A stretch of 64,000 nucleotides of DNA from Macrostomum lignano (taxonomy: Eukaryota): NCBI GenBank assembly GCA_002269645.1, contig NIVC01000609.1:1-64000 (forward strand). Reading direction: 5' to 3'. The position numbers were made by a program, and so were the translations under genes. Below are positions 10,541-57,661 of this stretch, one piece after another; the stretch's first letter is position 1; each line of letters begins with the position of its first letter. The notes beneath the pieces are model-generated. The model saw nothing but the letters and a program-made list of their open reading frames with translations. It was not told the origin of the DNA and searched no databases.

Positions 10541-13500
10541 TCACTCGGAAAAGTCGGCTTGATCAACAAATTCTAACAAAGATTTCTCCTCGGCGCGAAC
10601 AAATCGATATAGCAATTCAGCCAAATTATCGTGACACCTGTCCATCTGGGCGGCCATTCTAGCATCGAATCCGACAGCTGTAGGCTTCTTCTCATCGGCA
10701 TTAACTGGCGGGAACAGGTTCAGCTCGATACCTGCGCTATTATGCAACAATGCCAGTTCCTCAATGGTCTCGGGTAGGATGACGTAATCAGCAAATTGTG
10801 GGCAATATTTGAAGCTGGAGCGCCCTCTGATTAGATTCAATAGCGCGTCTAGCTGGTGCTGGCGCTGCTGCTGTCCCTCGGTTTCTTCGTCTGGCCAGTC
10901 CCGCTGCAGCAGCACCAGACAGTGGCCGATGAGGCAGTCTGGCGCATCGCTAGAGCTGTCAGCCCGGCTGGCTAAGCCAACTAGAAGATCCGCCAAGGTG
11001 GCCACCAGCAGGCGCAGCGCCAGGCCGCAGGTTAGCGGCGCGAGGCACGGCGCCGCGGCCGGAGGTTGAGCGTCGGCTAGCGAGATGGCGGGCGCCGGTG
11101 ACGAGAGAGATATCAGGCTGCCATCGGACGGCGACAGGGCTTGGCAGCAGGCCAGGAGCGGGCGGACTGAGGCGGCCTGTGCGATAGATAAAAGTACACA
11201 GTTTTAAAGTGCAAAACTGAGTAAAACTGATGATAGATAGATAGACGCTGCATAAATATGTAATTGTGTCTAACAGGGACTAATAGAAGATCATTAGACA
11301 GGTGTAACTATGGATCAAACAGGATTCTGGTGAGACTAAATATCTAACAGGATCAGATTGAGGATTAGCAGAGGTCACTAACTTTTTACCTGCCCAAATG
11401 GGCAGATGTGCAACCGACAGCTCAGCCGCAGCTATTGCGCAGCGCACCTGAGGCTGCGTACGGCTGTTCAGTCCAAGGACGGGTTGAGGGTCGCCACACA
11501 CCCTCAATTACCCCAGCTAATGCTGGCACCCATTTTACAGCTCATGGGTGAACTGAAGCAATGCAGAGTTAAGTGTCTTGCTCAAGGACACAATTTGTTC
11601 CAGTGGGGTCGAGAATCGAACCCCCGACCTTTTAGTCGTGAGCTCGATGCTCTAACCACTAGGCTACAAACCATCTACGCCGCTAAATATCTAACAGGAA
11701 CATGTGTGGGATCATCAGAGATGGTGTTAACAAACCATAGCTCCCTGCAGCTGAAGGCACTGAGCCTCATAATAGAGCCTGTGCTCAGTAGGCCAAGCCT
11801 CCGGCCCTGACGCAAGCAGGCGCAGCTCCTTCAAGCAGGCAGCCGGCTGTCCAATGTACAGCAGGTGCTCAGACACGATGCTATCTAACCAAGCCAGCCT
11901 GACAGCGCCCCGACGCTGCAGTCGATCCTTGATCGAATCAATTCTTCGCTGCAATTCCGGCCAATCCCGTATTAGCCAAACAATATTGCTGGCCGATAAA
12001 AAAGCTTTAGAGGCTTCGCGGCGAGCAATTGAAACTGTTGGCATTTGCAGTTTGTCGGCTACTGGGCGAAGGCAGTGCAACAGTAGGATGGCGTGACTGG
12101 ACGAAGCGCTCTCCAAGTTGGACGCGTCGATGCCCTGGTGAGCAGTTGCCGACGTGACTGACTGTGGCGACGTTGGAGGCGTTGGCGATGTTGAACCCGA
12201 CTGCTGCCGGGCCAGACGGTAAAATCGATTGGCGGCTTCCGCTAGAAGAAGCAGACTAACTGCGGCCAGAGACTTGATCTAGTGGAGGAAAATATTTGGA
12301 AATCGCATCTAATCATGTCTTTGTCCAGACGCAAAATGGCATCTCTTTTATGCATAATAAACCCAATCTAAACGACATCTAGCGATAACAAATGGCACCT
12401 AGCGATTACAAATGGCACGTCCTAGCGATAGCAAATGGCACCTAGCGATTACAAATGGCACTTAGCGATTACAAATGGCACCTAGCGATAGCAAATGGCA
12501 CCTAGCGATAACAAATGGTACCTGGTAGGAAAAAATGGTGCCAACCGATAACAAATGGCACCTAGCGATAACAAATGGCACCTGGTAAAAACAAATGGCA
12601 CCTAGCGATAACAAATGGCACCTAGCGATAACAAATGACACCTAGCGATAACAAATGGCATCTAGCGATTACAAATGGCACCTAGCGATTACAAATGACA
12701 CCTAGCGATAACAAATGCCATCTAGCGATAAAAAATGACATCTAGCGATAACAAATCTTCTACCAATACTAAACTCTTCTTAATACTATGACTACATTAA
12801 TGTCCGTCAGTTCTCGAGTAAATAAATAAATGTAAAGTTTAAGCACCTGATTAGAATCCAATTCTGAACTAGCTGCAGCCGATAGTACAGAATCCGGCTG
12901 CCCTCTGGCCAGCTGATGCAACTGCAGGCCCAGCTGGTGGCACAGCCTATCAGCCAGTTGGCGGCCAGCTACCGGCCAAGAATTGCCAGATAGTTGCCAG
13001 CTGTCCAGCAGTGCTTGCTGCTGCTGCTGTGCAGAGCCCACAGCAACGTAAAATTCCATAGACATTGTTAACAACTTTCGAAGTAATTTTGAACTTAATT
13101 GCACGCTGCCACTACTTGCATTGGCGCCGTCTAGTAGTACGGGAAGCACATCCACAACTAGGCATTTTCGATGCTTGTTGAGCACTGTGTCTTCGCAAGA
13201 GTCCTACAAAAGTAGAGCGATGGGGATAGGTTATAGATCGCAGGCATTAAAAAACTGGTCGAGTTTTGAGTTACATCAAAATGCCAACTACGTCAACTGA
13301 ATCAACTAAACCGGCACTGGAATGGCATCTCCCCAGACCGAAATGGCACCTCTTTACACTGAAATTGCATCTCTCCACACTGAAATGGCATCTCTCCACA
13401 CTGAAGTGGAATCTTTCCAAACTGAAATGCCATCTCTAAACAGACATGGCACCTCTCCACACTGAAATGGCATCTCTAAACAGACATGGCATCTCTCCAC

Positions 13501-16180
13501 ACTAAAATGGCATCTCTAAACAGACATGGCATCTCTCCACGACTCCACACTGAAATGGCACTCTCCACACTGAAGTGGAATCTTTCCAAACTGAAATGCC
13601 ATCTCTAAACAGACATGGCACCTCTCCACACTGAAATGGCATCTCTAAACAGACATGGCATCTCTCCACACTAAAATGGCATCTCTAAACAGACATGGCA
13701 TCTCTCCACGACTCCACACTGAAATGGCACTCTCCACACTGAAGTGGAATCTTTCCAAACTGAAATGCCATCTCTAAACAGACATGGCACCTCTCCACAC
13801 TGAAATGGCATCTCTAAACAGACATGGCATCTCTCCACACTAAAATGGCATCTCTAAACAGACATGGCATCTCTCCACACTGAAGTGGAATCTCTCCACA
13901 TTGAAATGCCATCTCTAAACAGACATGGCACCTCTCCACACTGAAGTGGAATCTCTCCACATTGAAATGAATGAAATGAATGAATGAATGAATGAAAATG
14001 AAATGAATCTCTCCACACTGAAGTGGCATCTCTCTACACTGAAGCGGCATCTCTCCACACTGAAATGGAATCTTTCCAAACTGAAATGCCATCTCTAAAC
14101 AGACATGGCACCTCTCCACACTAAAATGGCATCTCTAAACAGACATGGCATCTCTCCACACTGAAGTGGAATCTCTCCACATTGAAATGCCATCTCTAAA
14201 CAGACATGGCATCTCTCCACACTGAAGTGGAATCTCTCCACATAGAAATGCTATCTCTAAACAGACATGGCATCTCTCCACACTGAAGTGGAATCTCTCC
14301 ACATAGAAATGCTATCTCTAAACAGACATGGCACCTCTCCACACTGAAGTGGAATCTCTCCACATTGAAATGAATGAAATGAATGAATGAATGAATGAAA
14401 ATGAAATGAATCTCTCCACACTGAAGTGGCATCTCTCTACACTGAAGCGGCATCTCTCCACACTGAAATGGAATCTTTCCAAACTGAAATGCCATCTCTA
14501 AACAGACATGGCACCTCTCCACAGAGAAATGCCATCCCTAAACAGACATGGCATCTCTCCACACTGAAGTGGAATCTCTCCACATTGAAATGCCATCTCA
14601 AAACAGACATGGCATCTCTCCACACTGAAGCGGCATCTCTCCACACTGAAATGGAATCTTTCCAAACTGAAATGCCATCTCTAAACAGACATGGCATCTC
14701 TCCACACTGAAGTGGAATCTCTCCACATTGAAATGCCATCTCTAAACAGACATGGCATCTCTCCACACTGAAGTGGCATCTCTCCACACTGAAATTGAAT
14801 CTTTCCAAACTGAAATGCCATCTCTAAACAGACATGGCACCTCTCCACATTGAAATGCCATCTCTAAACAGACATGGCATCTCTCCACACTGAAGTGGAA
14901 TCTCTCCACACTGAAGTGGAATCTCTCCACATTGAAATGCCATCTCTAAACAGACATGGCACCTCTACATACTGAAATGACATCTCTCCACACTGAAATG
15001 GAATCTCTCCACACTGAAATGGCATCTCTCCACACTGAAATGGAATCTCTCCACACTGAAATGGAATCTCTCCACACTGAAATGGAATCTCTCCACACTG
15101 AAATGGCATCTCTCCACACTGAAATGGCATTTCTCCACACTGAAATGGAATCTCTCCACACTGAAATGGCATCTCTCCACACTGAAATGGAATCTCTCCA
15201 CAGTGAAATGGCATCTCTCCACACTGAAATGGAATCTCTCCACACTGAAATGGCATCTCTCCACACTGAAATGGAATCTCTCCACACTGAAATGGAATCT
15301 CCACACTGAAATGGAATCTCTCCACACTGAAATGGCATCTCTCCACACTGAAATGGCATTTCTCCACACTGAAATGGAATCTCTCCACACTGAAATGGCA
15401 TCTCTCCACACTGAAATGGCATCTCTCCACACTGAAATGGAATCTCTCCACACTGAAATGGAATCTCTCCACACTGAAATGGCATCTCTTCAAACCTGAA
15501 TAGCTGAAAACAATCAATACAGACACATCGAAGCAGCCTAGATATAGATTCAAGTGCTTGAACGGTTTGGATTGCAAGGAACGAACCTGTTCAGCCGCTA
15601 GCAGAGCTTCAACAAGCGACGAGCCTTGCTGTGCAGCCACAGACGGATATTGTTGAATAGCGTAGAGCAATAGGCCAGCCTGCTCTAGGGCGCTGCCAAC
15701 TGATTGGCCATATTTCAGCAACAGCTCGCATTGCAGCCGGCCGGGCAGGCGGCCAAACAGTGCGGTTGAGGCGGCATCTCCATCAGCTTTAGTCACGCCT
15801 TCCAGTACTCGGCTGAGCTCCTGATAAAACAGCGCCTCGTTGGGATTTTCGGCGTACATTTGCATGAAAGCGGCCGCCGCCGCGTCCCAATCGGCTTCAT
15901 CTCTGGCTAACTGATAGGCCCAGCGGCGAACTTTGAAACTGTCTCGCCAAAGGCATTTAGCCAGTGCCAGATGACACCTGGCTAGCTGATAATCACCTTG
16001 GCTAGAGCGGGTTTCAATTGCTGAGCAGACGAAATCAACATCAGCTTCTAAGCGTTTCGATGCCGGCACTAATGGAGGCGGCTCGGTGGAACCTGATGAA
16101 GACGATGGGGCAGAGGCTGGAGCCGAGGAACCAGACGATGGCGGTGCAGCTTTGCGCTTTAGCTTGTTTGATGACGACAT
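10541..16180 (-). CDS. INTS10: Integrator complex subunit 10, about 709 aa
   Basis: Exons 16180-15587, 13203-12847, 12278-11736, 11176-10541, all phase 0 with GT-AG. LFGRLPGRLQCELLLK, QQGSSLVEALLAAE, HRKCLVVDVLPVLL, IGHCLVLLQRDWP and QMDRCHDNLAELLYRFVRAE match human INTS10 (LFETLPGRVQCEMLLK, GEALLEAE, FRKLFVCDVLPLII, LGHVIVLLQQEWP). The summed length is almost identical to human INTS10. Confidence 0.92.
11380..11670 (-). mobile_element. tRNA-derived CORE-like SINE in INTS10 intron 3
   Basis: Reverse complement: tRNA head with A/B boxes, then tgtgtccttgagcaagacacttaactc...ctgtaaaatggg, which resembles the MIR/CORE consensus tgaccttgggcaagtcacttaacctc...ctgtaaaatggg. Confidence 0.85.
12378..12755. 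repeat. Minisatellite, 20 nt, cacctagcgataacaaatgg (INTS10 intron 2)
   Basis: Tandem copies. Confidence 0.93.
13320..15492. repeat. Minisatellite, 21 nt, atctctccacactgaaatggc, with higher-order blocks (INTS10 intron 1)
   Basis: Tandem copies with interspersed tctaaacagac variants and a duplicated (tgaa)n insert. Confidence 0.95.
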
Positions 16181-20422: not shown

Positions 20423-21297
20423 GGTTTCCATGCATTTCGGTGCCTGTGCTTTTTGGTGCCTGGCATTTCGGTGCCCTAGATTGCCTTTCGGTGCCCCAGT
20501 TTATATTATGCCAAAATGGTGATAATAAAAAAGAAATCCTATAACAAATATAATATAAACTTTACAAAACGTTTGATATTTTTAATAAAAGCAAAAATAA
20601 TTTTGTGAAACTGGCACGTTTCTTTAAATTGGAAAAATCCGTTCAATTTAATTGCATACATTTGCTGTATTCTGAATTCTGTATATATAATATAAGCTGG
20701 CTGCACTCAGCAAGCATGCTAGTGCTATGAAGACTTAGTTAGGAAAGTTAAAATCTATCAACAATGCTATATATAGTTTTGATTAAAATTATGAAATGTG
20801 ACAAGTGACAATGTGAAATATATGTATTTTAATTAGTATTGATTTTTTGAATCACCCGATCATGTTTTATTTCATAAAACTGCCTAGGAAATGAAGCAAG
20901 TATTATTTAATGAACTGAAATCTTTTTGGGCATAAATATTGGACCATATTCTATAAGATTTTATTATAAGCGCATTTGGGGCATTAGTTTAAAATTTTGA
21001 CGCAGCTGAGACGCGCGGCTATAGTGACATGGAAGTAAATTGAATCGAGTCAACTGGCCTAATCGAAAACCATTTTTTGAATTCATTAAAACAGCAGGTC
21101 AGCCATTTAACTAAATGAATAATACCTTCTTTTTAAAGTAAATAAGTACTGCAAAGACAAAGCACTTATTGCTAAATTAGAGCTCAATCTCTATATTTTG
21201 TGTCCAATTCTAATATATAATTTGGGCACCAAAAAGCAAGCTGGGGCACTGAAATGATCGGCACCGAAAAGCACAGGCACCGAAAAGCGTGGATACC
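20423..21297. mobile_element. MITE B, same family as MITE A, inverted relative to it
   Basis: Ends ggtttccatgcatttcggtgcc / ggcaccgaaaagcgtggatacc. Flanks tttctcta (20415-20422) and tttctgta (21298-21305). Confidence 0.8.
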
Positions 21298-23274
21298 TTT
21301 CTGTATCTATATACTTTGCCTATATCTATATACTTTGTATCTATATCTATATTATCTATATATCCATAGGCCTAGCTATAGCAAAACTCTAGCCTACAGG
21401 GTCCTTGTAGCTTTTAGTAGGGCCTAGGCCTAGCTTAGGGCAACAAGCCTTTGACTAGATGATATGGCTAGTCAATTAAAGTTTTTGCCCATGTAATAGT
21501 TCAGAAGGCTATATCATGCATGTCTTTACATAGAATAGGCCTTTACATAGGCCTTTGCATGCCTTTACATAGTGCATAGAACAATAAGTGGCCTATGCCA
21601 ATCCTTATTGTCATTTCAATCTTTGGCATAAGGCTGCCAAGGTATAAGAACCATTGGCAATCAAGTAAACATGATTATGTCTTAGGCAATATCTCAGTAA
21701 TTGATCTCAGTAGGTAGGTCAGACCCAGAGGTCACCATGAAGACTACTTTTTTCTACATATTTAGCTTAAGGCCAACTTGTGATGTTGCTGCCATTAGCT
21801 TAGGCTATCCAGTAGCTACTAGGTATCTTTAGCTATCAGTGATAGTAATACAAGGCTTTACTTCTTTTGGTGCTATCAACTTATGCATCTTCTTAGCAAG
21901 AAGCCATTATCTAGGTAGGCAAGCTAGTCCTCAATAGGCCAAGCACAAACAAGAAAGATACTACAGTATCACCCTGTAGCACACCTAATGACATTCTTAA
22001 TTGGTCTAATAATCTATTTGATATCATCACTAAAGTGGTTATATCCTAGTGCATTGCCATGATAGTAGAAATAAATTGCTCTGCTATGTTATACATGCAA
22101 AGCATAAGAGGTAGCACACTATAAACAAATAAATTAAAAGCCTTGAAGAAGTAAATGAAGATTATCATGAGACTTGCCAGATAGATGTGCACCTCCTTGA
22201 TGATGCATCAGAGAGCTAGGATCTATATCAATGTAATGCAATATGGGCAGAACCCATTTTACTCAAGGCATAGAAACTAGTCTAGCAAAGGCTACAACTA
22301 AGCTAATAGCACATGGTTGAACAGCTTTGCTGCATAGAACATAGTTGAGATCCCCCTGTGCTCCTCCTGTTATGTCATGCTTGGCTTCTTTGGAATCACA
22401 ATGATATGTATAGTTGTCCACTTATGAGATGTGGCACCTCCAGAGAGGACATTCAAATAGTACACCCGGTGGAATCACAGTTAGGAACACCCGTGAAGGT
22501 ATTCTAGATTTACTCTAGTTTTAAGTCGTAAACAGTTCACCTTTCCAAAGTAATTCGGTCTTCATAACTATATAAATGTTAAAATATCAACTGATATTCT
22601 TATCATATTTTTTTATTAAAGTTTACAAGATATAAAAACAATATTTTTAAACGATTGTTCCAATTTTTATTTGGACAACTTAAATATCCAGACATTCGAA
22701 TATATTTTACATTTCCCTTAATAAAATATATCTTACGTAACACAGTTTATTTTAAACAATATAAGAACATTTTTACGTTTAAAGTTCACGACAAAATGGA
22801 TATTAGGGAACTTAAAAAAGGGAACGACACGTTATGATTAAATAAAATAATCGAACCGTCATTGTGACTTATATTATATATCCTAAATCAGGTAATTCGA
22901 AGAAAAATCTAGTCGTTACAAACCGTTTTTAAAATTTTATTGAAAACAAACTTATTGTCTAAATAACTTCAAAACTTGTGAGAAATTTGTTCCCCGGTGA
23001 ATCTTTTCAATATGATACAAAGGGATATCAGAGAAACTGAGATATATTACTGATAGGATAGTAAATCGAACGAACTAATACAAACTTAACAAATTTAAAC
23101 GTTTAGGATTAAAATCTTCTGAAGTTGATTCCCATCGTTTGAAAAAATCCATTTAAATTATTGTAATAGATTAGAATTTAGTCCGTACTAAGACCCCAGT
23201 CGTACTCATCAAATTAATATTAGGACTCTAATGCAATGTCAGATATATTAACTACATTGGAACTGAAAGTCAGT

Positions 23275-23910
23275 TACGACGGTAAATAAGCCGACGTTGA
23301 CAACCGCAACGACGACGACGACGACGAGTCAACCGACGTGGGAGTCGGGTTTCGTAACTTTACGATGTTTTGGCTAAGGCTTCGGTCGTTAAATTGTAAT
23401 CTTCCGACGTCAGGTCTGTTTTAGTCGACGCAGGACGTGAAAGCGTAACTGTTTAGTTGACCTCGGGCAGTAGCGCCGGAGAGGTTAACGACCTTAGACT
23501 TACTGTTTACGCCGTAACGGCTGACAGACATGTGCGGCGTGTCAGCGTAACTTCTGGTACCGAGCACGACGACGTCCTGCCTGCCAACGTTGGAATACCT
23601 CTTAGAAGCTGACCAGTGGAGCGGCGGATGTCGATGGTGATACGGCAGATTTCCGCCGTCATCGGTTCCGTTAGCTTTAAGTTGTAGATTTAGCTCAAAC
23701 TTACTGTCGCCGTTGCTCCCGCCTAACAAACGGTTTCCGCCGAGCCTAGTCCGGCGAAGTCACGACGACAAGTCAAACCGAGGGCACGACCGATAGACGC
23801 AGTGACACCACGAGCCTAAGAAGGAGATATGCTCCGTAGCCCTCGCCGCGTTCTCAGCGAGCCTCAGGCAACCTAACCGGTCGATAGGACAACTATTAGT
23901 GGGCAAAGGC
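23275..23910 (+). CDS. ACVR2: Hidden exon 1 of the ActRII-like receptor (signal peptide, Cys-box ectodomain, TM), in the complemented block
   Basis: Complement translates without stops: MLPFIRLQLLALLLLLLLSWLHPQPKALKCYK...EGCSPDKISCVLH...SNCWNLNDKCGIADCLY...GSCCCRTDGCNL...VLLFSLAPVLAICVTVVLGFFLYTRHRERRK...HPFP, followed by donor gtgaga. Confidence 0.92.
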
Positions 23911-26900
23911 CACTCTGGAACACGGTTTAAGTAAAAAGTCTACATCGAAACAAATACGGTGAGATAAGATATATCAATCGTAAACACGGTAGGATAAGAT
24001 CAACATCATCATAAACACGGTGGGATAAGGTCGACATCACCATAAACACGGTGGGATAAGGTCGACATCAATCATAAACACGGTGGGATAAGGTCGACAT
24101 CACCATAAACACGGTGGGATAAGGTCGACATCATCATAAACACGGTGGGATAAGGTCGACATCAATCGTAAACACGGTGAAATAAAATCGACATCAATCG
24201 TAAACACGGTAGGATAAGATCGACATCATCATAAACACGGTGGGATAAGGTCGACATCACCATAAACACGGTGGGATAAGGTCGACATCAATCATAAACA
24301 CGGTGGGATAAGGTCGACATCACCATAAACACGGTGGGATAAGGTCGACATCATCATAAACACGGTGGGATAAGGTCGACATCAATCGTAAACACGGTGA
24401 AATAAAATCGACATCAATCGTAAACACGGTAGGATAAGATCGACATCAATCGTAAACACGGTAGGATAAGGTCGACATCAATCGTAAACACGGTAGGATA
24501 AGGTCGACATCAATCGTAAACACGGTAGGATAAGATCGACATCAATCGTAAACACGGTAGGATAAGATCGACATCAATCGTAAACACGGTAGGATAAGAT
24601 CGACATCAATCGTAAACACGGTAGGATAAGATCGACATCATCATAAACACGGTGGATAAGACCGACATCAATCGTAAACACTGTAGGATAAGGTCGACAT
24701 CATCATAAACACGGTGGGATAAGATCGACATCATCATAAACACGGTGGGATAAGGTCGACATCATCATAAACACGGTGGGATAAGGTCGACATCATCATA
24801 AACACGGTGGGATAAGGTCGACATCATCATAAACACGGTGGGATAAGGTCGACATCAATCGTAAACACGGTGGGATAAGGTCGACATCATCATAAACACG
24901 GTGGGATAAGGTCGACATCATCATAAACACGGTGGGATAAGGTCGACATCATCATAAACACGGTGGGATAAGGTCGACATCATCATAAACACGGTGGGAT
25001 AAGGTCGACATCAATCGTAAACACGGTGGGATAAGGTCGACATCAATCGTAAACGCGGTGGGATAAGGTCGACATCATCATAAACACGGTGGGATAAGGT
25101 CGACATCATCATAAACACGGTGGGATAAGGTCGACATCATCATAAACACGGTGGGATAAGGTCGACATCAATCGTAAACACGGTGGGATAAGGTCGACAT
25201 CATCATAAACACGGTGGGATAAGGTCGACATCATCATAAACACGGTGGGATAAGGTCGACATCATCATAAACACGGTGGGATAAGGTCGACATCAATCGT
25301 AAACACGGTGGGATAAGGTCGACATCAATCGTAAACGCGGTGGGATAAGGTCGACATCATCATAAACACGGTGGGATAAGGTCGACATCATCATAAACAC
25401 GGTGGGATAAGGTCGACATCATCATAAACACGGTGGGATAAGGTCGACATCATCATAAACACGGTGGGATAAGGTCGACATCAATCGTAAACACGGTGGG
25501 ATAAGGTCGACATCAATCGTAAACGCGGTGGGATAAGGTCGACATCAATCGTAAACACGGTGGGATAAGGTCGACATCAATCGTAAACGCGGTCGACGTC
25601 GAACTTCCTAAACGTAGAGTCAAAATCGGCGGAATAATAATTATTTCTAGATGAAATGCTGGGTAATTAATGGACAAGATTCCACCCGGTGGACAGGTCG
25701 GTATAAGCCGATTTCCTCGCGGACCGTTGGCCGTTTAAGCCGACGCACATGTAACCGCTTCTGCGGCTCTGCCTAGTCGCTCATCGGCATTTCCACAAGG
25801 GCGGCGTCCTCGCCCCGTCGACCGATCAACTCGTCCTCGACATGTCGGACGGCCTCTACTCAGTGGGGTTGTATGAGACGAAATAGCCCCGGCTAGTCAC
25901 GCCGGTCCCAGGTCTGGACGCGGATACCAATCAGTGGCTCATGGTGGGCGACCCTTCACGAGTGCTGATGGACCGGCCGGTGTGCCAGAGGACCTAGGTC
26001 GACGAGCTAGATCGGCTCAGGGAGTCGGCGCCGGACCGTAAGGACGTGCTCTCGTCGTCGCTCTTTGGGCGATAACGAGTAGCCCTATAGTTTTCAGCTT
26101 TGCACAATTAATCCAGCCTGGATTCGACGACGTAACGGCTAGACCCTAACCGATTCTTCAAAAAAGTCCCGCTCAGATAGCCGCTGCAAGTAGGCGTCCA
26201 AACATGAAAATAAACTATCAACACAGAGTCTTACAGTCACGTCTATAACCAGTCATGAAAGTCTAGCGTCTGGTTGATAGACAGTCATCAAAGTCTAGTG
26301 TCTGGTTGATAGACTGTCGTAAAAGTCTAGCGTCTGGTTGATAGACTGTCATCAAAGTCTAGTGTCTTGTTAATAGACTGTCATCAAAGTCTAGCGTCTG
26401 GTTGATAGACTGTCGTCAAAGTCTAGCGTCTGGTTGATAGACTGTCGTCAAAGTCTAGCGTCTGGTTGATAGACTGTCATCAAAGTCTAGCGTCTGGTTG
26501 ATAGACTGTCGTCAAAGTCTAGCGTCTGGTTGATAGACTGTCATCAAAGTCTAGCTTCTGGTTGATAGACTGTCGTCAAAGTCTAGCGTCTGGTTGATAG
26601 ACTGTCGTCAAAGTCTAGCGTCTGGTTGATAGACTGGTCGTCAAAGTCTAGCGTCTGGTTGATAGACTGTCGTCAAAGTCTAGCGTCTGGTTGATAGACT
26701 GTCGTCAAAGTCTAGCGTCTGGTTGATAGACAGTCATCAAAGTCTAGTGTCTTGTTAATAGACTGTCATCAAAGTCTAGCGTCTGGTTGATAGACACAGC
26801 AGTTTCAGATCGCAGACCAACTATCTGTCTTGACTTACTTGACTTAGCTGCAGGGGGCGTCCGGCGGATGCAGCGGGGAGGGGGAGGAGACCGCCCATTC

Positions 26901-29900
26901 CGCTAGCCCCTGGCGACCAACGACTTCCGTTGAAGTGGTGTCGCTCAGGGGGACCCGTCGGTCTCGCCTGCAGCGCGGTCCTCCTCACCGACGGTGGGGA
27001 AGAAATCAGCTCGTCCGGTGTCCCTGAGGTACCGGGCGAGCAGCGGGATGCTCTCGGGCCTGCAAACGTCGGAGAGAACCGGGTTTGGCCCGAGGTGAGT
27101 AAGCCTGGCCCTGGTGAAAACCGGGCAGTGGCAGATAAAATGCTCGGCGTTTTCACTGCCTGAGCGGCAGAAGGGGCACCGCTCCTCGGGTACTTGGCCC
27201 TGAAGGAAGCGGTGGCGAGAGAAGCAGCCATGCCCGGAGAGGGCCATGCTAACTGCTCTGAGGTCTCTGCGGTTGAGCCTGAGGAGGGCTCTACGCAGGA
27301 GAGGAGAGGGACAGGGGACGGCAGCACGGGATTGCCTACAATTCCGGGTGTCGTGCCACCTGTGGAGATGCTCGGAGTCAGCCCAGCGCTTAACGCGGGA
27401 ATTGATCACCGAGGCGGGGATGGGGGCACCCGGGCCCGGCCCCAATAGCGCGCCGGCGGAGCCAGCCTTGGCCAGCAGGTCAGCGCGCTCGTTGCCGAGG
27501 AAGCCGGCGTGGCCCGGGATCCATCTGAGCTCCACCTGGTTGCCTAGCGCAAGCCCGTTGAGCTGGGTGTTGCAGTCCAGGACGGACCTGGAGCTGGCGG
27601 TGCTGCGGCAGAGGGCCCGAAGGGCTGCTTGGCTGTCAGAGTGAAAAATAAATTTCCGGCCGCTAAGCTGCCTTCGGCGCAGCTCTGCGCGCAGGAGCTG
27701 ATGGCAAGCACCTCGCTCTGAAAAACACTGGAGTTGAGCCCAGTGTGCTGGGAGTAGTTCCACACCACTTCTCCATTGAAGAAGACGCAAGCTCCGAAGC
27801 CTGAAAGACCATGCCTCATAGAGCCGTCAGTGTAACAGTGGACTTCAGAGTCGCTCCAGCTGTCACTCGCCTCGTGTCGAGGCTGAATGGTGACCTTATA
27901 CCTTTGGCTCAGGAGAAGGGTGGCTGGGATCGAGTCTTAACCACGCGGGCTACGGGGCGAGAGCCCTCAAGCCCTTCGCAATATTGGCGCCACTTGGCCG
28001 TCTTGGCCCTTCTGACTTGGCCCTTAAACTCGTGGATCGCACGGGTATAGGCCTCTCTGTCAGATGGGTCTTTGGTTTTGAGCGCTCGCCTTTGGAGGGT
28101 CCTGGCTCGGCGCCGAAGGGCCCCGAGCTCTGGGTTCCACCAGGGAGCAGATTTCTTGCCTTTATAGGCCTTTAGGGGGCAGGCTGCTTCAAAGGCAGTG
28201 GTAATCGCCCCGCCCAGGGAGGAGGCGAGATCGTCCACCACCTGGCAGTCAGAGAGGTCACTGGGGGGTCAAGATCCCGAAGGCCGCGGCTCAGCTTCGA
28301 GCCAAAGGCGGCCCAATCGGTGTTCCTGACGTTCCGACTCCAAGTGACCTTAGGCTTTTGCTTGGTCGGCTCAATGCAAAAGCGGATAAAGCGGTGGTCC
28401 GAGAGCGAGTCCTCGTCCCACACTCGCCAGCCCGTAACTGCGGAAAGCAGTCCGGGTGAGGCGATGGTGGTGTCGATGACTTCGGCTCACCGCCCATTAT
28501 TGAACGTTGGTGCATTGCCCACGTTACAGAAGTTGAGGTTAGTGCTGCTGACATAGGCCAGCAGCTCCTCGCCTCTGTTATTGGTGTTCCTGCTGCCCCA
28601 ATGCAGGTGGTGTGCGTTCACATCCCCTGCAATGAGCAGCTCGAACCGACGGGACGCGGCGTAGTCAATCAGGTTGACTAGTACGCCGCAGACTACTGGG
28701 GCATCGCCTGGAAAATAGGCAGAAGCTACCAGCACAGGTTTATTGGGAATGAGGTTATTGATTTGAACAACACAGATGTCCCCAGTCGAGAGATCAGGTC
28801 TCATCCATGCCTCAAAAGCTTTTGCAGCAAAGACCAGAGATCTTGGGCGAGGCTGAGAGCCCGCCATGCAAAAACAGTGGTAGCCAGATGGCACATTATT
28901 TGGCTTACCTTTAGTCATCCAGGGGTCCTGTACGAAGACCAGGCCCGGAAGCTGTTGCTCTGCCGTGCGCATCAGGTTGACCGACGCCGCCACGCAGTGC
29001 TGGGTGTTGATCTGCAGACACCAGGTAGTCGCTGGCATCATTGCAGATCGGATGTTGCAGCCGCCAGGAGTTCCTCCTCCTCCTCGGCGCTCACCGGCTT
29101 CGGGTCGGGGTCGCCGGTGTCCATGGGCTCTTCTTCAGCAAAAGGCCCCCGATTGGCCGGAAGGCAGTAGGCAGCGTTCGCCGCCCTTTGCCCACCATCC
29201 ATGGGGTCCTCCGCCTCAGATTGGCCCAATGCCCTGGAGCAGCCAGCCGCCTGGGCAGGCGGGTCCGTCTCCAGTCGGCCCTGCCCCGAGGGGTTGGGCC
29301 CAGCTGGGACGTCCCCACCCTCCCTGGACGAACTGGTGCGCCTAGGCGTCCCGGCGACCTCTCGCCTCAGCTGGGAGATTTTGGCGGTACGGACTGCCTC
29401 AGCTGCACGCTGGTACAGGCCGCGCCGCTTGGTGCTGCGCGCCGGGCGTCGGTCGCCTCCGCCCTCAGCAGCGCGCTCAGCTTTGCCCGCGCGGCCGTGC
29501 TGCCGGGCAGGGCGGTTTGCTTTGGCAGTCTGAGCAGAGGCTTGCGCCTCGGCCCCGGCCGCCTCCGCATCCCGCCCGCCCTGCTCACTGCCACGGGGAG
29601 GGTCGGCCTCGTAGGAGCGGATGCGCAGCTTCCAAAGGCCGACGTTGATGAAGCTGCCGTGTGGATAACGCCTCATCCAGGCGTCCGACAGCCCCAGGAT
29701 GGCTGTGAAGCCAGTGCCGTCGGTGCGCTTAAGGGTGTCATGCACCACTAGGCCCGCGGCGGGAAGCTCCCGGTTGACTGCTAGCAGTCCTTTCCGGAGC
29801 TCGTCAGCAGAGGTAACAACGCTCCTGGCCGGGACCCAGATTCGATGCCTCTTGGTCCGGGGGCGCTCGTCCTCTCTGCAGAAGGCTAGGTTGAGGTCCC

Positions 29901-32659
29901 AGCTCTGCTCGGGCAGCAGCTCAAGGAGCCGCCGACCCGAGTCAGCATCACTGGGCCAAATGAGAAGGCACGAGTCCCTCGTCGCATTCGAATGAATGTT
30001 CAGAGGCGTGCCCTTCAGAGTTTGCTTCCACAGGAGGCCATCAACGGCACTTCTCACCTGCTTCAGCTGATCGGGAGACAGGCGCGCGTCCTTTCCCAGG
30101 ATGACAACCGCCGGTTGCCTCTTTGCCGCATCAGCGTAGGAGGCCCGGGGGTCAGTGGAGCTTTCTTCAGGTGGGCTGTCCACCCTCCCGGCTGCATCGG
30201 CCTCCCTATCCTGGGCAGGGGCTTCCGTGGGCTCGAGGCCCTCTTCCGCCACCGCCCCAGATTGGGAAGCTTCCGCTGCCGCGGGCCGTTGGCCCCTGGC
30301 GCCGGTTAGGCTTCCGCCCTCCTTGGCCCCCCTCGCCTTGTTAAGTCGACGGCGGGCAGCTCCAGAGGTGGTGCTGCGTTTCTTAGCAGCTGGAGTAGCA
30401 GGTGTCTTCTCGGAGGCACCGCTCAGAGTTGGCTCCACGGGTCTCGCCGAGGCGTCCCCGATGGTAGCAGGTGGTATGGCCGAGGAGTCCACGGCCCCAG
30501 CCGAGGCCGGAGGCACTGTGTCATCCACAGCCGGTTTGTTACTTCGGTTAGAAGCCATTGGCTGGAAGTAAAAAGGTGGGACTTCCTGCAGAACACAGGC
30601 AAAGAGCCGCAAGGCCGCAACCCCAAACCAAGCGGCAGGCCCCCAAAAAGCAAAATACCACCCTGCGGGGGGACCCAAAAGCGCAAGGGGAACCGTTAGC
30701 GACCAGACTACTCCCTGGCCAAGCGTCCATCAGCACGGAGTTACACTGGGACATTAGAGGGTGCGTTTATGGTCACACCAGGACCCGGCGCCAACGAATC
30801 AGCTCGGCAGGGCCCAAGGGGGCCTGCCTTAACACCCACGGGACGAGTACCCTTCGAAGTGCGCCTTGCAAGGTGAAAATCAGGAGACAGAGTCTCTAGA
30901 GCTATCAGCCCGCCAGGGGAGGCAGGTGTGAGCATCGCTGGCTGGGATAAAGGCCATACCAGTCTCATACTGCACAGATAGTTCACCACGCCATTACGTG
31001 CAGGACCCGGGGTCCTGGGGGCAACAGCCCCGGCCCAACTATCTGTCAGTAGTTTCAGATCACAGAACAATTATCTGACAGTAGCTTCAGATTGCATAGC
31101 AGTTATCTAACGGTAGTTTCAGATCACAGAACAATAAATCACTGCAGGTTGGCACCAGGCGCTACATGTCGCCGGAAGTCCTTGAAGGCGCGATGAGTTT
31201 CTACAAGGACAGTTTCCTACGCGTTGATGTCTACTCTCTGGGCCTGGTGCTGTGGGAGATGCTCACCCGCTGTACGGACGCGTACGGAGCCGAAGGCGTG
31301 CCAGCCTACAGGCTGCCATTCGAGGCGGAGACGGGCTCCAGCAACCCCAGCCTGTCGCAGATGCAGGCAGCTGTTGTTATTGAACGCAGGCGGCCGGAGT
31401 TCCCGGCCGAGTGCCAGTCGCATCAGGTGAGTATTATGGCAAAGGCAATAGGAACTGCGCTTTTTAGCTTGCCATTAAAACAGACAGTATCTTAGCAGAC
31501 CTCTGGCAGAGAGTCAAGAAGGTCAAATGCCCCCCTTTTTTAGCAAAAATGGTGTCTTGCGAGTATTGCCTAGTTTAACCCACCATTACACCTTGTATAT
31601 TTACTATTGTTGGCTTCCTAAAGCCATGGCATTTTATAACTGCCCCCCACCTCAAGCCATGGCATCTTATAACTGCCGCCCTTCAAGCCATGGCATCTTA
31701 TAACTGCCGCCCTTCAAGCCATGACATCTTATAACTGCCCTCGCAAGCCATGGCATCTTATAACTGCCGCCCTTCAAGCCATGACATCTTATAACTGCCC
31801 TCGCAAGCCATGGCATCTTATAACTGCCGCCCTTCAAGCCATGGCATCTTATAACTGCCCTCGCAAGCCATGGCATCTTATAACTGCCCTCGCAAGCCAT
31901 GGCATCTTATAACTGCCGCCCTTCAAGCCATGACATCTTATAACTGCCCTCGCAAGCCATGGCATCTTATAACTGCCGCCCTTCAAGCCATGGCATCTTA
32001 TAACTGCCCTCGCAAGCCATGGCATCTTATAACTGCCGCCCTTCAAGCCATGGCATCTTATAACTGCCCTCGCAAGCCATGGCATCTTATAACTGCCGCC
32101 CTTCAAGCCATGACATCTTATAACTGCCCTCGCAAGCCATGGCATCTTATAACTGCCCCCCCCCCTCAAGCCATGGCATCTTAGCAACTCCCCATTGAGC
32201 CAATTGGCATCTCAGCAACTCTCCATTAAGCTTTTTAGCTGCCTTAAAAACTTGTTACGTGTAACTTTATGAGTACGTATAGCACTAAAGCCATTACAGC
32301 ACATTCAAAGTAAAACTGTGGTGCAAAGCTACAGATTATCTGTTCGACCTTGAACTAATTAATCGAATAATCAGGGCTTGTCCTACCTGCGCGAGACCAT
32401 CTGCTGCTGCTGGGACCACGTGCCAGAGGCCCGATTGACAGCCGCCTGCGTAGCCGAACGATGCAAAGCCCTGCGCCGTCTGCCTGTCAGCGTGGCCGCC
32501 GAAGAAGCCAGACGTCGGCAGCAGGAGGAGCAGCTCGCCGATCAGCAGGCGCCCGCCGCAGACCTGCAGCTGCCGCAAGCCGCTGTTATCAACGAAGCAT
32601 CTGCTGCCGCCTCCGCAGAGGAGCTGCGACCGCTGCGCGAAGCTGAGGACGCAGTCTGA
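23275..32659 (+). CDS. ACVR2: Activin type II receptor-like Ser/Thr kinase (TGF-beta type II receptor family), about 571 aa, 4 coding exons; exons 1-2 readable only after in-place complementation
   Basis: Exons 23275-23910, 25683-26198, 31148-31426, 32375-32659, all phase 0. Signal peptide, 10-Cys ectodomain, TM segment, no GS box, complete kinase domain. Confidence 0.9.
23930..25595. repeat. Minisatellite, 31/32 nt (true sequence tagtatttgtgccaccctattccagctgtag), receptor intron 1, inside the complemented block
   Basis: About 50 tandem copies of atcataaacacggtgggataaggtcgacatc as displayed. Confidence 0.95.
25683..26198 (+). CDS. ACVR2: Hidden exon 2 of the ActRII-like receptor (kinase subdomains I-VII), in the complemented block
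   Basis: Complement: acceptor ttctaag, then 172 codons VGHLSSHIRLKERLATGKFGCVY...VAVKVF...HPNILCFIGA...LWLVTEYHPLGS...KPAIAHRDIKSRNVL...CCIADLGLAKKFFQGESIGDVHPQ, then donor gtttgt. Confidence 0.95.
26250..26829. repeat. Minisatellite, 32 nt (true sequence acagcagtttcagatcgcagaccaactatctg), receptor intron 2; continues at 31036-31135
   Basis: Displayed as the complement up to 26795, then in normal sense. Confidence 0.95.
26945..29041 (-). pseudogene. Disrupted ORF2: APE endonuclease, [RT deleted], RNase H, CCHC
   Basis: APE motifs QINTQH, VQDPW, SAYFP, GDVNAHH.WGS, SLSDHRFI. In-frame TGA at 28487-28489. 1-nt frameshifts near 28255 and 27690. RNase H motifs YTDGS, VFQSEVLAI, HSDSQAAL, WIPGHAG..GNERADLLAK. 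C-terminal CPFC...EHFICHC. Confidence 0.88.
29038..30558 (-). CDS. ORF1 (gag-like, DUF4780-like central domain) of the retrotransposon, 506 aa from MASNRS
   Basis: Uninterrupted ORF directly upstream of APE, with a basic low-complexity N-terminus and central LLIWP...RIWVP...ELRKGLLAVN..L. The domain name is from recall, not from a search. Confidence 0.75.
   Translation of the reverse strand: MASNRSNKPAVDDTVPPASAGAVDSSAIPPATIGDASARPVEPTLSGASEKTPATPAAKKRSTTSGAARRRLNKARGAKEGGSLTGARGQRPAAAEASQSGAVAEEGLEPTEAPAQDREADAAGRVDSPPEESSTDPRASYADAAKRQPAVVILGKDARLSPDQLKQVRSAVDGLLWKQTLKGTPLNIHSNATRDSCLLIWPSDADSGRRLLELLPEQSWDLNLAFCREDERPRTKRHRIWVPARSVVTSADELRKGLLAVNRELPAAGLVVHDTLKRTDGTGFTAILGLSDAWMRRYPHGSFINVGLWKLRIRSYEADPPRGSEQGGRDAEAAGAEAQASAQTAKANRPARQHGRAGKAERAAEGGGDRRPARSTKRRGLYQRAAEAVRTAKISQLRREVAGTPRRTSSSREGGDVPAGPNPSGQGRLETDPPAQAAGCSRALGQSEAEDPMDGGQRAANAAYCLPANRGPFAEEEPMDTGDPDPKPVSAEEEEELLAAATSDLQ
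31148..31426 (+). CDS. ACVR2: Exon 3 of the ActRII-like receptor (kinase VIII-X)
   Basis: cag|VGTRRYMSPEVLEGAMSFYKDSFLRVDVYSLGLVLWEMLTRC...YRLPFEAETGSSNPSLSQMQAAVVIERRRP...HQ|gtgagt. Confidence 0.95.
31622..32180. repeat. Minisatellite with alternating 31/28-nt units, caagccatggcatcttataactgcc(gccctt/ctcg)
   Basis: Tandem copies in receptor intron 3. Confidence 0.93.
32375..32659 (+). CDS. ACVR2: Exon 4 (last) of the ActRII-like receptor (kinase XI plus tail)
   Basis: cag|GLSYLRETICCCWDHVPEARLTAACVAERCK...stop. Matches the ActRII pattern [22 protein letters not shown]. Confidence 0.92.
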   Translation, partial: GLSYLRETICCCWDHVPEARLTAACVAERCKALRRLPVSVAAEEARRRQQEEQLADQQAPAADLQLPQAAVINEASAAASAEELRPLREAEDAV

Positions 32660-32749
32660 TGCGCCATAGGAAGCCATCGTCTGTCTGATATGCACTTTTG
32701 CCTACTCTTGAGTAGAAATATTGGTTATTTATATCCTCTGTTATGCATT

Positions 32750-33183
32750 CAGATCCCCAGATCCCACTACTGGGGAATTTGGAATCCCCTTGTCTGTCTC
32801 TCAGATCCCCAGATCCCACTGCTGGGGAATTTGGAGTCCCTTTGTCTGTCTCTCAGATCCCCAGATCCCACTACTGGGGAATTTGGAATCCCCTTGTCTG
32901 TCTCTCAGACTCCCAGATCCCACTACTGGGGAATTTGGAATCCCATTGGCTGTCTATCAGATCCCCAGATCCCACTACTGGGGAATTTGGAATCCCCTTG
33001 TCTGTCTCTCAGACTCCCAGATCCCACTACTGGGGAATTTGGAATCCCCTTGGCTGTCTCTCAGACTCCCAGATCCCACTACTGGGGAATTTGGAATCCC
33101 CTTGGCTGTCTCTCAGATCCTCAGATCCCACTAGTGGGGAATTTGGAATCCCCTTGTCTGTCTCTCAGATCCCCAGATCCCAT
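32750..33183. repeat. Minisatellite, about 52 nt, cagatcccactactggggaatttggaatccccttgtctgtctctcagatccc
   Basis: About 8 copies. Confidence 0.93.
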
Positions 33184-34804: not shown

Positions 34805-36233
34805 GCTTCATCATCTCAGCTTCATCCCCGTTACTGATCCTCTGCTTCATCACCGTCACAGATCCTCAGCTTCATCACCATCACTGATCCTCAGCTTCAT
34901 CACCGTTACTGATCCTCAGCTTCATCACCGTCACAGATCCTCAGCTTCATCACCATCACTGATCCTCAGCTTCATCACCGTCACTGATCCTCAGCTTCAT
35001 CACCGTCACTGATCCTCAGCTTCATCACCGTCACTGATCCTCAGCTTCATCACCGTCACAGATCCTCAGCTTCATCACCATCACTGATCCTCAGCTTCAT
35101 CCCCGTCACTGATCCTCAGCTTCATCACCGTCACTGATCCTCAGCTTCATCACCGTCACTGATCCTCAGCTTCATCACCGTCACTGATCCTCAGCTTCAT
35201 CACCGTCACTGATCCTCAGCTTCATCACCGTCACTGATCCTCAGCTTCATCACCGTCACAGATCCTCAGCTTCATCACCATCACTGATCCTCAGCTTCAT
35301 CACCGTCACTGATCCTCAGCTTCATCACCGTCACTGATCCTCAGCTTCATCACCGTCACTGATCCTCAGCTTCATCACCGTCACTGATCCTCAGCTTCAT
35401 CACCGTCACTGATCCTCAGCTTCAGCACCGTCACTGATCCTCAGCTTCATCACCGTCACTGATCCTCAGCTTCATCCCCGTCACTGATCCTCAGCTTCAT
35501 CCCCGTCACTGATCCTCAGCTTCATCACCGTCACTGATCCTCAGCTTCATCACCGTCACTGATCCTCAGCTTCATCACCGTCACTGATCCTCAGCTTCAT
35601 CACCGTCACTGATCCTCAGCTTCATCACCATCACTGATCCTCAGCTTCATCACCATCACTGATCCTCAGCTTCATCACCGTCACTGATCCTCAGCTTCAT
35701 CACCGTCACTGATCCTCAGCTTCATCACCGTCACTGATCCTCAGCTTCATCACCGTCACTGATCCTCAGCTTCATCACCGTCACTGATCCTCAGCTTCAG
35801 CACCGTCACTGATCCTCAGCTTCATCACCGTCACTGATCCTCAGCTTCATCCCCGTCACTGATCCTCAGCTTCATCACCGTCACTGATCCTCAGCTTCAT
35901 CACCGTCACTGATCCTCAGCTTCATCACCGTCACTGATCCTCAGCTTCATCACCGTCACTGATCCTCAGCTTCATCACCGTCACAGATCCTCAGCTTCAT
36001 CACCATCACTGATCCTCAGCTTCATCACCATCACTGATCCTCAGCTTCATCACCGTCACTGATCCTCAGCTTCATCACCGTCACTGATCCTCAGCTTCAT
36101 CACCGTCACTGATCCTCAGCTTCATCACCGTCACTGATCCTCAGCTTCATCACCGTCACTGATCCTCAGCTTCAGCACCGTCACTGATCCTCAGCTTCAG
36201 CACCGTCACTGATCCTCAGCTTCATCACCGTCA
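34805..36233. repeat. Minisatellite, 25 nt, gatcctcagcttcatcaccgtcact
   Basis: About 57 highly homogeneous copies. Confidence 0.95.
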
Positions 36234-36608
36234 CAATTATAAATACAATTACAAAAGTCAATTAAAATCAAAGTAATTATAGTAATTTCTTAAGCGTTGT
36301 TTTGCAATAGTTTATTTTGCTCAAAATTTACAGTGAGATTTATTAATTAAAAGCGATAGACTTCATTTTCACTATTGAGCTCATTAAAGTTCATTAATAG
36401 CATACAGTATTTTAATGTCGTCTATGTTTATTGAAATGGGGGCGAAGTATGCTACTGACTATATGAATTTGGTAAGTACTAAGTCCGGCGTATATGACTA
36501 AGATAGTATTGGATAAAAATACATGTATTGCTTAGTTCTAATATTCGCTTAGCTTAGAGTAAAGACTTGGGTACAAAATATGCTAAAATGATTAGCAGAA
36601 AAAATCAA

Positions 36609-36833
36609 TCAGAATAGCGGCTTCATATTGATCATATTCTCGGCGAAGGTGAACGGCAGTTTAATCACTTTAAGTATGGCCTCGCAAATGTCTTTAATTG
36701 GATCGATGCAAGCTCCAAATGGCAGCAGGAAGATGTAGATCCAGGCCAGCAGGAACGCGATTGGCCAGCCTAGGAATATCAGGGCTAGGAACCATAGGAT
36801 GGACCATAGAATGCCTGGGCACAGATCGGCCAT
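36609..36833 (-). CDS. 74-aa uncharacterised membrane microprotein
   Basis: ATG-to-stop ORF in non-repetitive sequence with a protein-like hydrophobic pattern: MADLCPGILWSILWFLALIFLGWPIAFLLAWIYIFLLPFGACIDPIKDICEAILKVIKLPFTFAENMINMKPLF. Candidate 37-nt GT-AG 5'UTR intron at 36899-36935. Confidence 0.75.
   Translation of the reverse strand: MADLCPGILWSILWFLALIFLGWPIAFLLAWIYIFLLPFGACIDPIKDICEAILKVIKLPFTFAENMINMKPLF

Positions 36834-40116: not shown

Positions 40117-57661
<17,545 letters not shown>

What the first reader, a model, noticed from the sequence alone, without database searches (positions are those of the whole stretch)
22450..26795. 4.35-kb block written as complement-without-reversal, hiding two receptor exons from all six reading frames
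Seen in sequence: the block has gacgacgac runs where this genome normally has ctgctgctg. Complementing each base in place gives a stop-free 212-codon exon (23275-23910: signal peptide, CCCRTDGCN Cys-box, TM) and a stop-free 172-codon kinase exon (25683-26198: ATGKFG, VAVKVF, HRDIKSRN, IADLGLA), with canonical AG/GT ends. These join in phase to the ordinary + strand exon at 31148 (DVHPQ|VGTRRYM). Established: a real inversion gives a reverse complement, and no known polymerase or recombinase produces an in-place complement, which would need parallel-stranded copying or inverted backbone linkages. Inference: most likely a gap-fill, scaffolding or processing step reversed a minus-strand segment without complementing it. 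Either way, standard annotation would report this receptor as a truncated kinase fragment. If raw reads confirmed the displayed sequence, it would be extraordinary.
Basis: partly seen in the sequence, partly recalled or inferred. Interest (0 to 1): 0.95.

Follow-up and report, generated by a model that had tools for sequence, protein, structure and literature searches.

The report
Complement-only assembly error hiding receptor exons
A 4.3-kb stretch of a public flatworm (Macrostomum lignano) genome contig was deposited with every base complemented but not reversed; this data-processing error hides the first two exons of an ordinary activin-type receptor kinase gene and is not a biological oddity.

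Summary
That reading gives two exons (212 and 172 codons). They splice in phase to ordinary + strand exons at 31148-31426 and 32375-32659, giving a 571-aa ACVR2-like type II receptor Ser/Thr kinase.

The window is positions 1-64000 of GenBank contig NIVC01000609.1 (Macrostomum lignano assembly Mlig_3_7, GCA_002269645.1). The public record is 100% identical across the block, so the anomaly is in the deposited assembly.

Two other copies of the locus in the same assembly carry the region in normal form. They match the window only after in-place complementation, colinearly and plus/plus, with 99.2% identity in the exons.

A protein from a different source (UniProt A0A1I8IFU7) carries this copy's private residues and spans all four exons.

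CpG/GpC counts and a Markov likelihood test single out this block and no other in the 64 kb.

Verdict: a late text-processing or assembly artefact; the responsible step was not identified. It has curation value and little biological interest. Raw reads could not be checked.

The parts
22454..26795 (.). Block deposited as the in-place complement (no reversal) of the true + strand sequence; 4342 bp, +/-1 at the right end.
   Evidence: The as-is sequence matches L001/L002 through 22453 and the complement matches from 22454. The best right seam is 26795|26796. All 133 complement-only HSPs to L001/L002 lie within 22459-26796, all plus/plus, with none outside. Markov LLR and dinucleotide tests agree.
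23275..23910 (+). Exon A, read left to right after complementing: start codon, signal peptide, Cys-rich ectodomain with CCCRTDGCN, TM segment; 212 codons; GT donor follows.
   Evidence: 99.2% nt identity to L001/L002 after complementing. 200/200 aa identical to P0124.
23977..25593 (.). 31-bp tandem array (about 51.5 copies) in intron 1, inside the block and displayed in complemented form.
   Evidence: Copy number differs among the paralogous loci.
25683..26198 (+). Exon B, read after complementing: kinase N-lobe through the activation-loop start (ATGKFG, VAVKVF, HRDIKSRN, IADLGLA); 172 codons; AG before, GT after.
   Evidence: 99.2% nt identity to the paralogues. 172/172 aa identical to P0001, P0121, P0122, P0124 and P0125.
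26258..26828 (.). 32-bp tandem array in intron 2 that crosses the right seam: 26258-26795 is complemented, and the last unit 26796-26828 is in normal form.
   Evidence: The complemented part matches the + strand remainder of the array at 31035-31135.
26829..31034 (-). Degenerate non-LTR (LINE) retrotransposon inserted in the 32-bp array of intron 2. It is in normal orientation and is not part of the artefact. It has a 13-bp target-site duplication, CCAACTATCTGTC, at 26816-26828 and 31035-31047.
   Evidence: ORFs. Pfam Exo_endo_phos_2 at 2e-11 and RNase_H at 3e-7. TSD. Absent from L001/L002. LLR positive.
31035..31135 (+). Remainder of the 32-bp array (3 units) in normal form, just upstream of exon C.
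31148..31426 (+). Exon C (93 codons, VGTRRYMSPEV...CQSHQ), ordinary + strand.
   Evidence: The annotated partial protein PAA79901.1 begins at 31160.
32375..32659 (+). Exon D (94 codons plus stop; ...CWDHVPEARLTAACV...), ordinary + strand.

Best explanation
The block is a sequence-handling artefact in the deposited Mlig_3_7 assembly of Macrostomum lignano. In contig NIVC01000609.1, positions 22454-26795 were written as the base-by-base complement of the true + strand. This is the same as a reverse-complemented segment that was flipped back by reversal only.

The true locus is an ordinary four-exon gene for a type II TGF-beta-family (ACVR2-like) receptor Ser/Thr kinase, one of three near-identical subgenome copies. 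By homology, such a receptor binds an activin/BMP-type ligand through its Cys-rich ectodomain and phosphorylates a type I receptor to drive Smad signalling. That function is inferred from the family, not tested here.

Shown: the complement relation, the seams, the presence of the block in the public record, the normal form in the paralogues, and the truncated annotation.

Inferred: the error arose late, after consensus and polishing, possibly when separate assembly units were joined. The block is as clean as its flanks, and both seams lie 33-37 bp to the left of points where the subgenome copies diverge structurally.
For: - The window as displayed is 100.000% identical over 11,841 bp, block included, to NIVC01000609.1:21160-33000.
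- As-is alignment to paralogous loci L001 (NIVC01000037.1) and L002 (NIVC01001871.1) stops at 22453 and resumes at 31035. After in-place complementation, 22454-26826 aligns colinearly, plus/plus.
- After complementing, exons A and B are 99.2% identical to the paralogues, the same as normal exons C and D (99.0-99.6%); intron sequence is about 96.5%.
- The block carries window-private substitutions at rates similar to its flanks and shows no excess of 1-bp indels.
- P0124 (UniProt A0A1I8IFU7) comes from a different DNA source, since its exon C is scrambled. It is identical at 200/200, 172/172 and 94/94 residues in exons A, B and D, including the private residues S19, Q24, L142 and N147.
- The reconstructed kinase domain is continuous across the seam: ACVR2A E=1.5e-94, Pkinase 2e-35.
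- The tandem repeat continues in phase across the right seam only in complemented form.
- The annotated product on this contig is a 183-aa partial protein.
- CpG/GpC counts and the Markov LLR flag only this block.
Against: - No raw reads, assembly intermediates or second-assembly DNA could be examined, so the claim that the real DNA differs from the record rests on paralogues and on one protein from another source.
- No step of the published pipeline (Canu, Pilon, SSPACE; PMC5730564) is known to me to emit complement-only sequence, so the culprit is unidentified.
- That A0A1I8IFU7 derives from the earlier ML2 assembly is my own recollection, not a tool result.
- The truncated annotation could partly reflect the 4.2-kb LINE in intron 2.
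Confidence: 0.95

Rival explanations
1. The real genome carries a genuine inversion (reverse complement) of this 4.3-kb segment in this subgenome copy, and the record shows it reversed but not complemented. The gene copy would then truly be disrupted, with a data error on top.
For: comp(S) equals rev(revcomp(S)), so the record alone cannot tell whether the truth is S or revcomp(S). Both seams lie close to structural breakpoints between the copies.
Against: P0124 carries this copy's private residues and joins exons A-D in one ordinary gene model from another source. Both seams are in exact register with the paralogues and with the tandem-repeat phase. This reading needs two events instead of one.
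Confidence: 0.025
2. The complement-only block was introduced after GenBank, in the local copy of the assembly or in window preparation, and the true public record is normal.
For: I could only read the collection's copy of the record, not GenBank directly.
Against: The separately fetched locus L003 is identical across the block. The NCBI protein for this contig (PAA79901.1) is a 183-aa partial protein starting 12 nt into exon C, whereas the two normal loci have 568- and 630-aa models. That is what transcript mapping onto an already faulty contig would give.
Confidence: 0.02
3. The displayed sequence is physically real in the worm: a 4.3-kb in-place complement produced by some unknown parallel-strand copying process.
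For: None positive. It is not formally excluded, because no reads were examined.
Against: No known polymerase or recombinase produces an in-place complement (established knowledge). The block keeps exons more conserved than introns and an intact ORF only in a reading that no cell could use. The same allele is read normally in another source. Dinucleotide biases are mirrored exactly, as a text operation would give.
Confidence: 0.003

Closest known systems
Activin receptor type 2A/2B (ACVR2A/ACVR2B), type II TGF-beta-family receptor Ser/Thr kinases
   Same: Architecture of signal peptide, Cys-rich ectodomain with a CCCxxxxCN box, single TM segment and a kinase domain without a GS box. The kinase domain matches ACVR2A (PDB 3q4t) at E=1.5e-94 over residues 219-513, better than TGFBR2, BMPR2 or any type I receptor. 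Best named database hits are ACVR2A/B at 38-52% identity.
   Different: The ectodomain is too diverged to hit Pfam Activin_recp or any solved ectodomain significantly. It has a flatworm-specific Ala/Glu/Gln-rich C-terminal tail and only four exons.
Paralogous M. lignano copies Mlig020019g1 (PAA92954.1, L001) and Mlig022484g1 (PAA63109.1, L002)
   Same: The same gene at 98-99% protein identity, with the same exon structure and intronic tandem arrays.
   Different: They are deposited in normal form. They lack the LINE in intron 2 and carry an extra ~720 bp upstream. L001 has a 4.6-kb insertion in the 5' part of exon A. They differ at the private residues N19, H24, S142 and S147.
Genuine chromosomal inversion or inverted misassembly
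   Same: A discrete segment with two sharp breakpoints that removes exons from the reading strand.
   Different: An inversion gives the reverse complement. Here the as-is block has no match to the paralogues on either strand, and only the unreversed complement matches, plus/plus and colinear.
Orientation errors in database entries (sequences submitted reversed or complemented only)
   Same: The same class of text-handling mistake. That such whole-entry errors exist is my own recollection, not a tool result.
   Different: Here the error affects an internal 4.3-kb block of a 122-kb long-read contig rather than a whole short entry. A full-text search found no description of such blocks in genome assemblies.

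Membership tests
Type II TGF-beta-family receptor Ser/Thr kinase (ACVR2-like) | Intracellular Ser/Thr protein kinase domain with catalytic motifs (VAVK, HRDxKxxN, DLG) | tested here: met
   Pfam PF00069 at 2.1e-35 over residues 222-501. Motifs at VAVK246, HRDIKSRN345 and DLG365. ACVR2A E=1.5e-94.
Type II TGF-beta-family receptor Ser/Thr kinase (ACVR2-like) | Closer to type II than to type I receptors; no GS box before the kinase | tested here: met
   ACVR2A/B score 320/297 bits, TGFBR2/BMPR2 about 220, and type I receptors 210 or less. No SGSG motif.
Type II TGF-beta-family receptor Ser/Thr kinase (ACVR2-like) | Cys-rich three-finger ectodomain (Pfam Activin_recp PF01064) | tested here: inconclusive
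   The CCCRTDGCN box and spaced cysteines are visible. PF01064 is not matched even at E<=10; there is only a sub-threshold CD59 three-finger hit (25.4 bits against a cut-off of 33.9). The BMPR2 ectodomain matches at E=2.3, not significant.
Type II TGF-beta-family receptor Ser/Thr kinase (ACVR2-like) | N-terminal signal peptide and a single transmembrane segment | tested here: met
   Read directly from the sequence only: LLALLLLLLLSWL at the N-terminus and VLLFSLAPVLAICVTVVLGFFLY at residues 163-185. No predictor was run.
Type II TGF-beta-family receptor Ser/Thr kinase (ACVR2-like) | Ligand binding and phosphorylation of a type I receptor | not testable with these tools
   Needs biochemistry.
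Biological inversion | The segment is the reverse complement of the ancestral or paralogous arrangement | tested here: not met
   The as-is block gives no HSP to L001/L002 or to the rest of the window on either strand. The complement matches plus/plus only.
Complement-without-reversal data artefact | In-place complementation restores colinearity, reading frames, splice sites and repeat phase with flanks and paralogues | tested here: met
Complement-without-reversal data artefact | An independent source reads the same allele in normal form | tested here: met
   At protein level only: P0124 is identical in exons A, B and D, including four private residues, and comes from a different DNA source because its exon C is scrambled. 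No DNA is on record for it.
Complement-without-reversal data artefact | Raw reads contradict the deposited sequence across the seams | not testable with these tools
   No read data are accessible.

The most novel reading that the evidence does not exclude
The deposited sequence is physically true, meaning this flatworm subgenome really carries a 4.3-kb in-place complement of a gene segment. That would imply an unknown parallel-strand DNA copying or rejoining mechanism.

A much more likely, and much less exciting, secondary reading is that a reproducible software fault wrote this block. In that case more complement-only blocks would sit in Mlig_3_7 or in other assemblies built the same way, silently truncating gene models. 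I put that at roughly 0.2 probability and about 0.3 interest.
Probability: 0.003. Interest if true: 0.95.

Novelty: not a real feature. Interest (0 to 1): 0.15.

Why it matters
Biologically there is nothing new. The gene is an ordinary ACVR2-like receptor that is already annotated in full at two paralogous loci.

The practical value is curation.
- A widely used reference assembly (GCA_002269645.1) contains at least one internal complement-only block.
- The block turns a 571-aa receptor into a 183-aa "partial" protein (PAA79901.1).
- It would mislead copy-number, subgenome, expression-mapping and guide-design work on this locus.

The case also shows that this error class is invisible to six-frame translation and to ordinary both-strand alignment. 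It is easy to detect with statistics that change under reversal, such as CpG against GpC or a Markov likelihood of the sequence against its complement, or by aligning the complement of an assembly to its own transcriptome.

Tried and rejected
- ORF length as evidence: rejected. The complement-only reading gives longer stop-free runs elsewhere (479 aa at 40103) because of tandem repeats.
- A second block at 47001-47500, which was negative only with the model trained on L001+L002: rejected. It coincides with a 25-bp satellite (46894-47692) and is positive with the other model.
- The 4.2-kb GC-rich segment 26829-31034 as part of the artefact: rejected. It is a normally oriented minus-strand LINE with a target-site duplication.
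- The block as an unpolished region, which would date the error before Pilon: not supported. There is no excess of 1-bp indels.
- The block as a patch copied from another subgenome copy: rejected. It carries window-private substitutions and private residues.
- A long direct repeat at the 720-bp indel that could place that breakpoint exactly on the left seam: none found, only short microhomology.
- DNA for the independent protein models P0001, P0124 and P0125: not on record.
- Literature search for complement-only blocks in assemblies: nothing relevant.
- The 2023 Mlig paper reports 36% of assembly length in scaffolds chimeric between subgenomes but does not mention this error type.
Full report
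**1. The observation**

I read 22300-27000 and complemented the block in place without reversing it.
- Positions 23275-23910 give a stop-free 212-codon frame that starts with ATG. It contains a poly-Leu signal peptide, a Cys-rich ectodomain with CCCRTDGCN, and a hydrophobic TM segment.
- Positions 25683-26198 give a stop-free 172-codon frame with ATGKFG, VAVKVF, HRDIKSRN and IADLGLA.
- In the complemented reading, GT follows both exons and AG precedes the second.
- The frames join in phase to the ordinary + strand exon 31148-31426 (…DVHPQ|VGTRRYM…) and to a final exon 32375-32659. The product is 571 aa.

**2. Is it more than chance?**

ORF length alone is not evidence in this window. Because of tandem repeats, the complement-only reading yields even longer stop-free runs elsewhere, up to 479 aa at 40103. 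The other evidence is decisive.
- The reconstructed protein has one continuous kinase domain spanning complemented and ordinary exons. Pfam Pkinase scores 2.1e-35 over residues 222-501. ACVR2A (PDB 3q4t) scores E=1.5e-94 over residues 219-513.
- Statistics that change under complement-only mark exactly this block. CpG exceeds GpC and AC+GT exceeds CA+TG only in 23-27 kb.
- I trained a strand-symmetric order-3 Markov model outside the block. All nine 500-nt windows from 22501 to 27000 prefer the complemented reading (mean -30 nats). The 118 windows outside average +30 +/- 22 with a minimum of -4.6.
- A model trained only on the paralogous loci gives the same block. It adds two isolated windows, the stronger of which falls in a 25-bp satellite.
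- The 32-bp tandem repeat at 26258-26795 continues in phase past the seam (26796-28) and recurs at 31035-31135 on the + strand, but only as the complement of what is displayed. The complemented block gives 16 plus/plus HSPs to that array. The as-is block gives none until 26797.

**3. Where the window comes from**

A protein search found an intact 597-aa protein, 99% identical (P0001). Its cluster consists of Macrostomum lignano proteins. I fetched the encoding contigs of three members, which gave three loci of assembly GCA_002269645.1 (Mlig_3_7).
- L003 is NIVC01000609.1:21160-42659. It is 100.000% identical to window 21160-33000 as displayed, block included, and window coordinates equal record coordinates. 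The anomaly is therefore in the deposited assembly, or at least in the collection's copy of it.

**4. Comparison with normal copies**

L001 (NIVC01000037.1, 630-aa model) and L002 (NIVC01001871.1, 568-aa model) are the other copies of the locus. M. lignano has S, L1 and L2 subgenomes, and 36% of Mlig_3_7 by length lies in scaffolds chimeric between them (PMC10733133).
- As displayed, the window aligns to both loci up to 22453 and again from 31035, with nothing in between on either strand.
- With the block complemented in place, 22454-26826 aligns colinearly, plus/plus.
- I aligned complement(window) to L001/L002. All 133 HSPs lie within 22459-26796, all on the plus strand, and none lie outside.
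- At base level the left seam is 22453|22454. The right seam is 26795|26796, one base better than the alternatives.
- After complementing, exons A and B are 99.2% identical to the paralogues, the same as ordinary exons C and D (99.0-99.6%). Intron sequence is about 96.5% identical.
- The block carries window-private substitutions at rates similar to its flanks and shows no excess of single-base indels.

So the block is a clean, faithful complement of this copy's own sequence. It is neither a low-quality patch nor a copy of another paralogue.

**5. An independent reading of the same allele**

P0124 (UniProt A0A1I8IFU7) matches the complement-derived protein at 200/200 residues in exon A, 172/172 in exon B and 94/94 in exon D.
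- The match includes the four residues private to this copy: S19, Q24, L142 and N147. All other copies have N, H, S and S.
- P0124 has a scrambled stretch in exon C that the window lacks. It therefore derives from a different DNA sequence.
- I believe that source is the earlier ML2 assembly, but this is my recollection and not a tool result. No DNA is on record for P0124.

That source reads all four exons in one ordinary gene model. This argues that the true arrangement is the plain colinear one, not a real inversion that was then mis-written.

**6. What it is and how it arose**

No known polymerase or recombinase produces an in-place complement (established knowledge), whereas a text operation does so trivially. 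The complement of S equals the reversal of the reverse complement of S. Either a segment was complemented without being reversed, or a reverse-complemented segment was flipped back by reversal only.

The published pipeline was Canu 1.4, Pilon 1.20 (Illumina and RNA-seq) and SSPACE 3.0 (PMC5730564). I know of no fault in these tools that does this, so I cannot name the step. Two clues are available, and both are inference.
- The block is as clean as its flanks. This fits an error made after consensus and polishing.
- Each seam lies a similar distance to the left of one of the two nearby large non-tandem differences from the paralogues.
  - The left seam is 37 bp before the ~720-bp indel at 22490|22491.
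  - The right seam is 33 bp before the LINE insertion point at 26828|26829.
  - The interval between the breakpoints is 4338 bp, against a block of 4342 bp.
  - This fits two models. In one, the block was a separate assembly unit ending where the subgenome copies diverge and was joined to its neighbours through ~35-bp overlaps. In the other, an interval was applied in a slightly shifted coordinate system.

**7. The gene**

It is a type II TGF-beta-family receptor kinase closest to ACVR2A/B.
- The kinase scores 320 and 297 bits against ACVR2A/B, about 220 against TGFBR2 and BMPR2, and 210 or less against type I receptors.
- There is no GS box.
- The ectodomain has the Cys box but is too diverged for Pfam Activin_recp or for any solved ectodomain.
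- By family homology it should bind an activin/BMP-type ligand and phosphorylate a type I receptor. This was not tested.
- The ORF of this copy is intact once the block is corrected. Intron 2 carries an antisense degenerate LINE (EEP endonuclease 2e-11, RNase H 3e-7) with a 13-bp target-site duplication.

**8. Verdict**

- It is not a biological feature.
- It is a curation issue in a public reference assembly that truncates one gene model.
- I found no other such block in the 64-kb window or in about 50 kb of the paralogous loci.
- The genome-wide frequency is unknown.
- The raw-read test remains the decisive step and could not be run here.

Noticed in passing
window 26829-31034 (minus strand); TSD at 26816-26828 and 31035-31047: A degenerate LINE-type retrotransposon sits in intron 2 of the receptor gene. 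It has a 546-aa ORF1 with no Pfam hit, an EEP endonuclease fragment and an RNase H, while the RT region is broken by stops. It has a 13-bp target-site duplication, is inserted into the 32-bp tandem array, and is absent from the two paralogous loci.
   Followed up: yes
window 22490|22491 vs L001 4037-4756 / L002 8491-9210: About 720 bp of AT-rich sequence is present upstream of the gene in both paralogous loci and absent from this copy. The junction shows only short microhomology (CACTT). The segment has no match elsewhere in the window in any of the four orientations.
   Followed up: partly
window seams 22453|22454 and 26795|26796: Both seams lie 37 and 33 bp to the left of the two nearby large structural breakpoints between the copies. 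The block length (4342 bp) nearly equals the distance between the breakpoints (4338 bp). This suggests the block was a discrete assembly or alignment unit. It remains unexplained.
   Followed up: partly
L001 about 5561-10200 (corresponds to window ~23298, in the poly-Leu part of exon A): The L001 copy has a 4.64-kb insertion inside the 5' part of exon A. Its annotated protein PAA92954.1 (630 aa) accordingly has a different, longer N-terminus that lacks the start of the signal peptide seen in the window and in L002.
   Followed up: no
whole window, e.g. 13315-15489, 23977-25593, 34815-36234, 40246-41368, 50136-51970: The density of tandem arrays with 13-95-bp units is extraordinary: about 30 arrays scoring above 400, some with 50-100 copies. 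Copy numbers differ between the three subgenome loci. This matches the published repeat content of the M. lignano genome.
   Followed up: no
window 45008-45915 and 37520-38434: A nearly pure-purine GA-rich array (GC skew 0.75, AT skew 0.90) and a CT-rich array lie about 7 kb apart. They are strongly strand-asymmetric low-complexity tracts.
   Followed up: no
window 36609-36833 (-) and 40117 onward (-): Annotated neighbours downstream of the receptor are a 74-aa ORF with no Pfam hit and a PDE8-like cyclic-nucleotide phosphodiesterase (PDE8A_N, PAS_9, PDEase_I) on the minus strand. Both are conserved in position at the paralogous loci.
   Followed up: no
P0124 (UniProt A0A1I8IFU7), residues aligned to exon C (query 442-477): The independent model of this same allele has a 36-residue scrambled stretch in exon C and returns to frame in exon D. 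This probably reflects indel errors or a mis-splice in its source assembly.
   Followed up: no
window 40103 and 29223 (complement-only reading): Stop-free runs of 479 and 346 codons occur in the complement-only reading of ordinary sequence, because of tandem repeats and GC-rich DNA. ORF length is therefore not a usable detector for this error class. Homology or reversal-asymmetric statistics are needed.
   Followed up: yes
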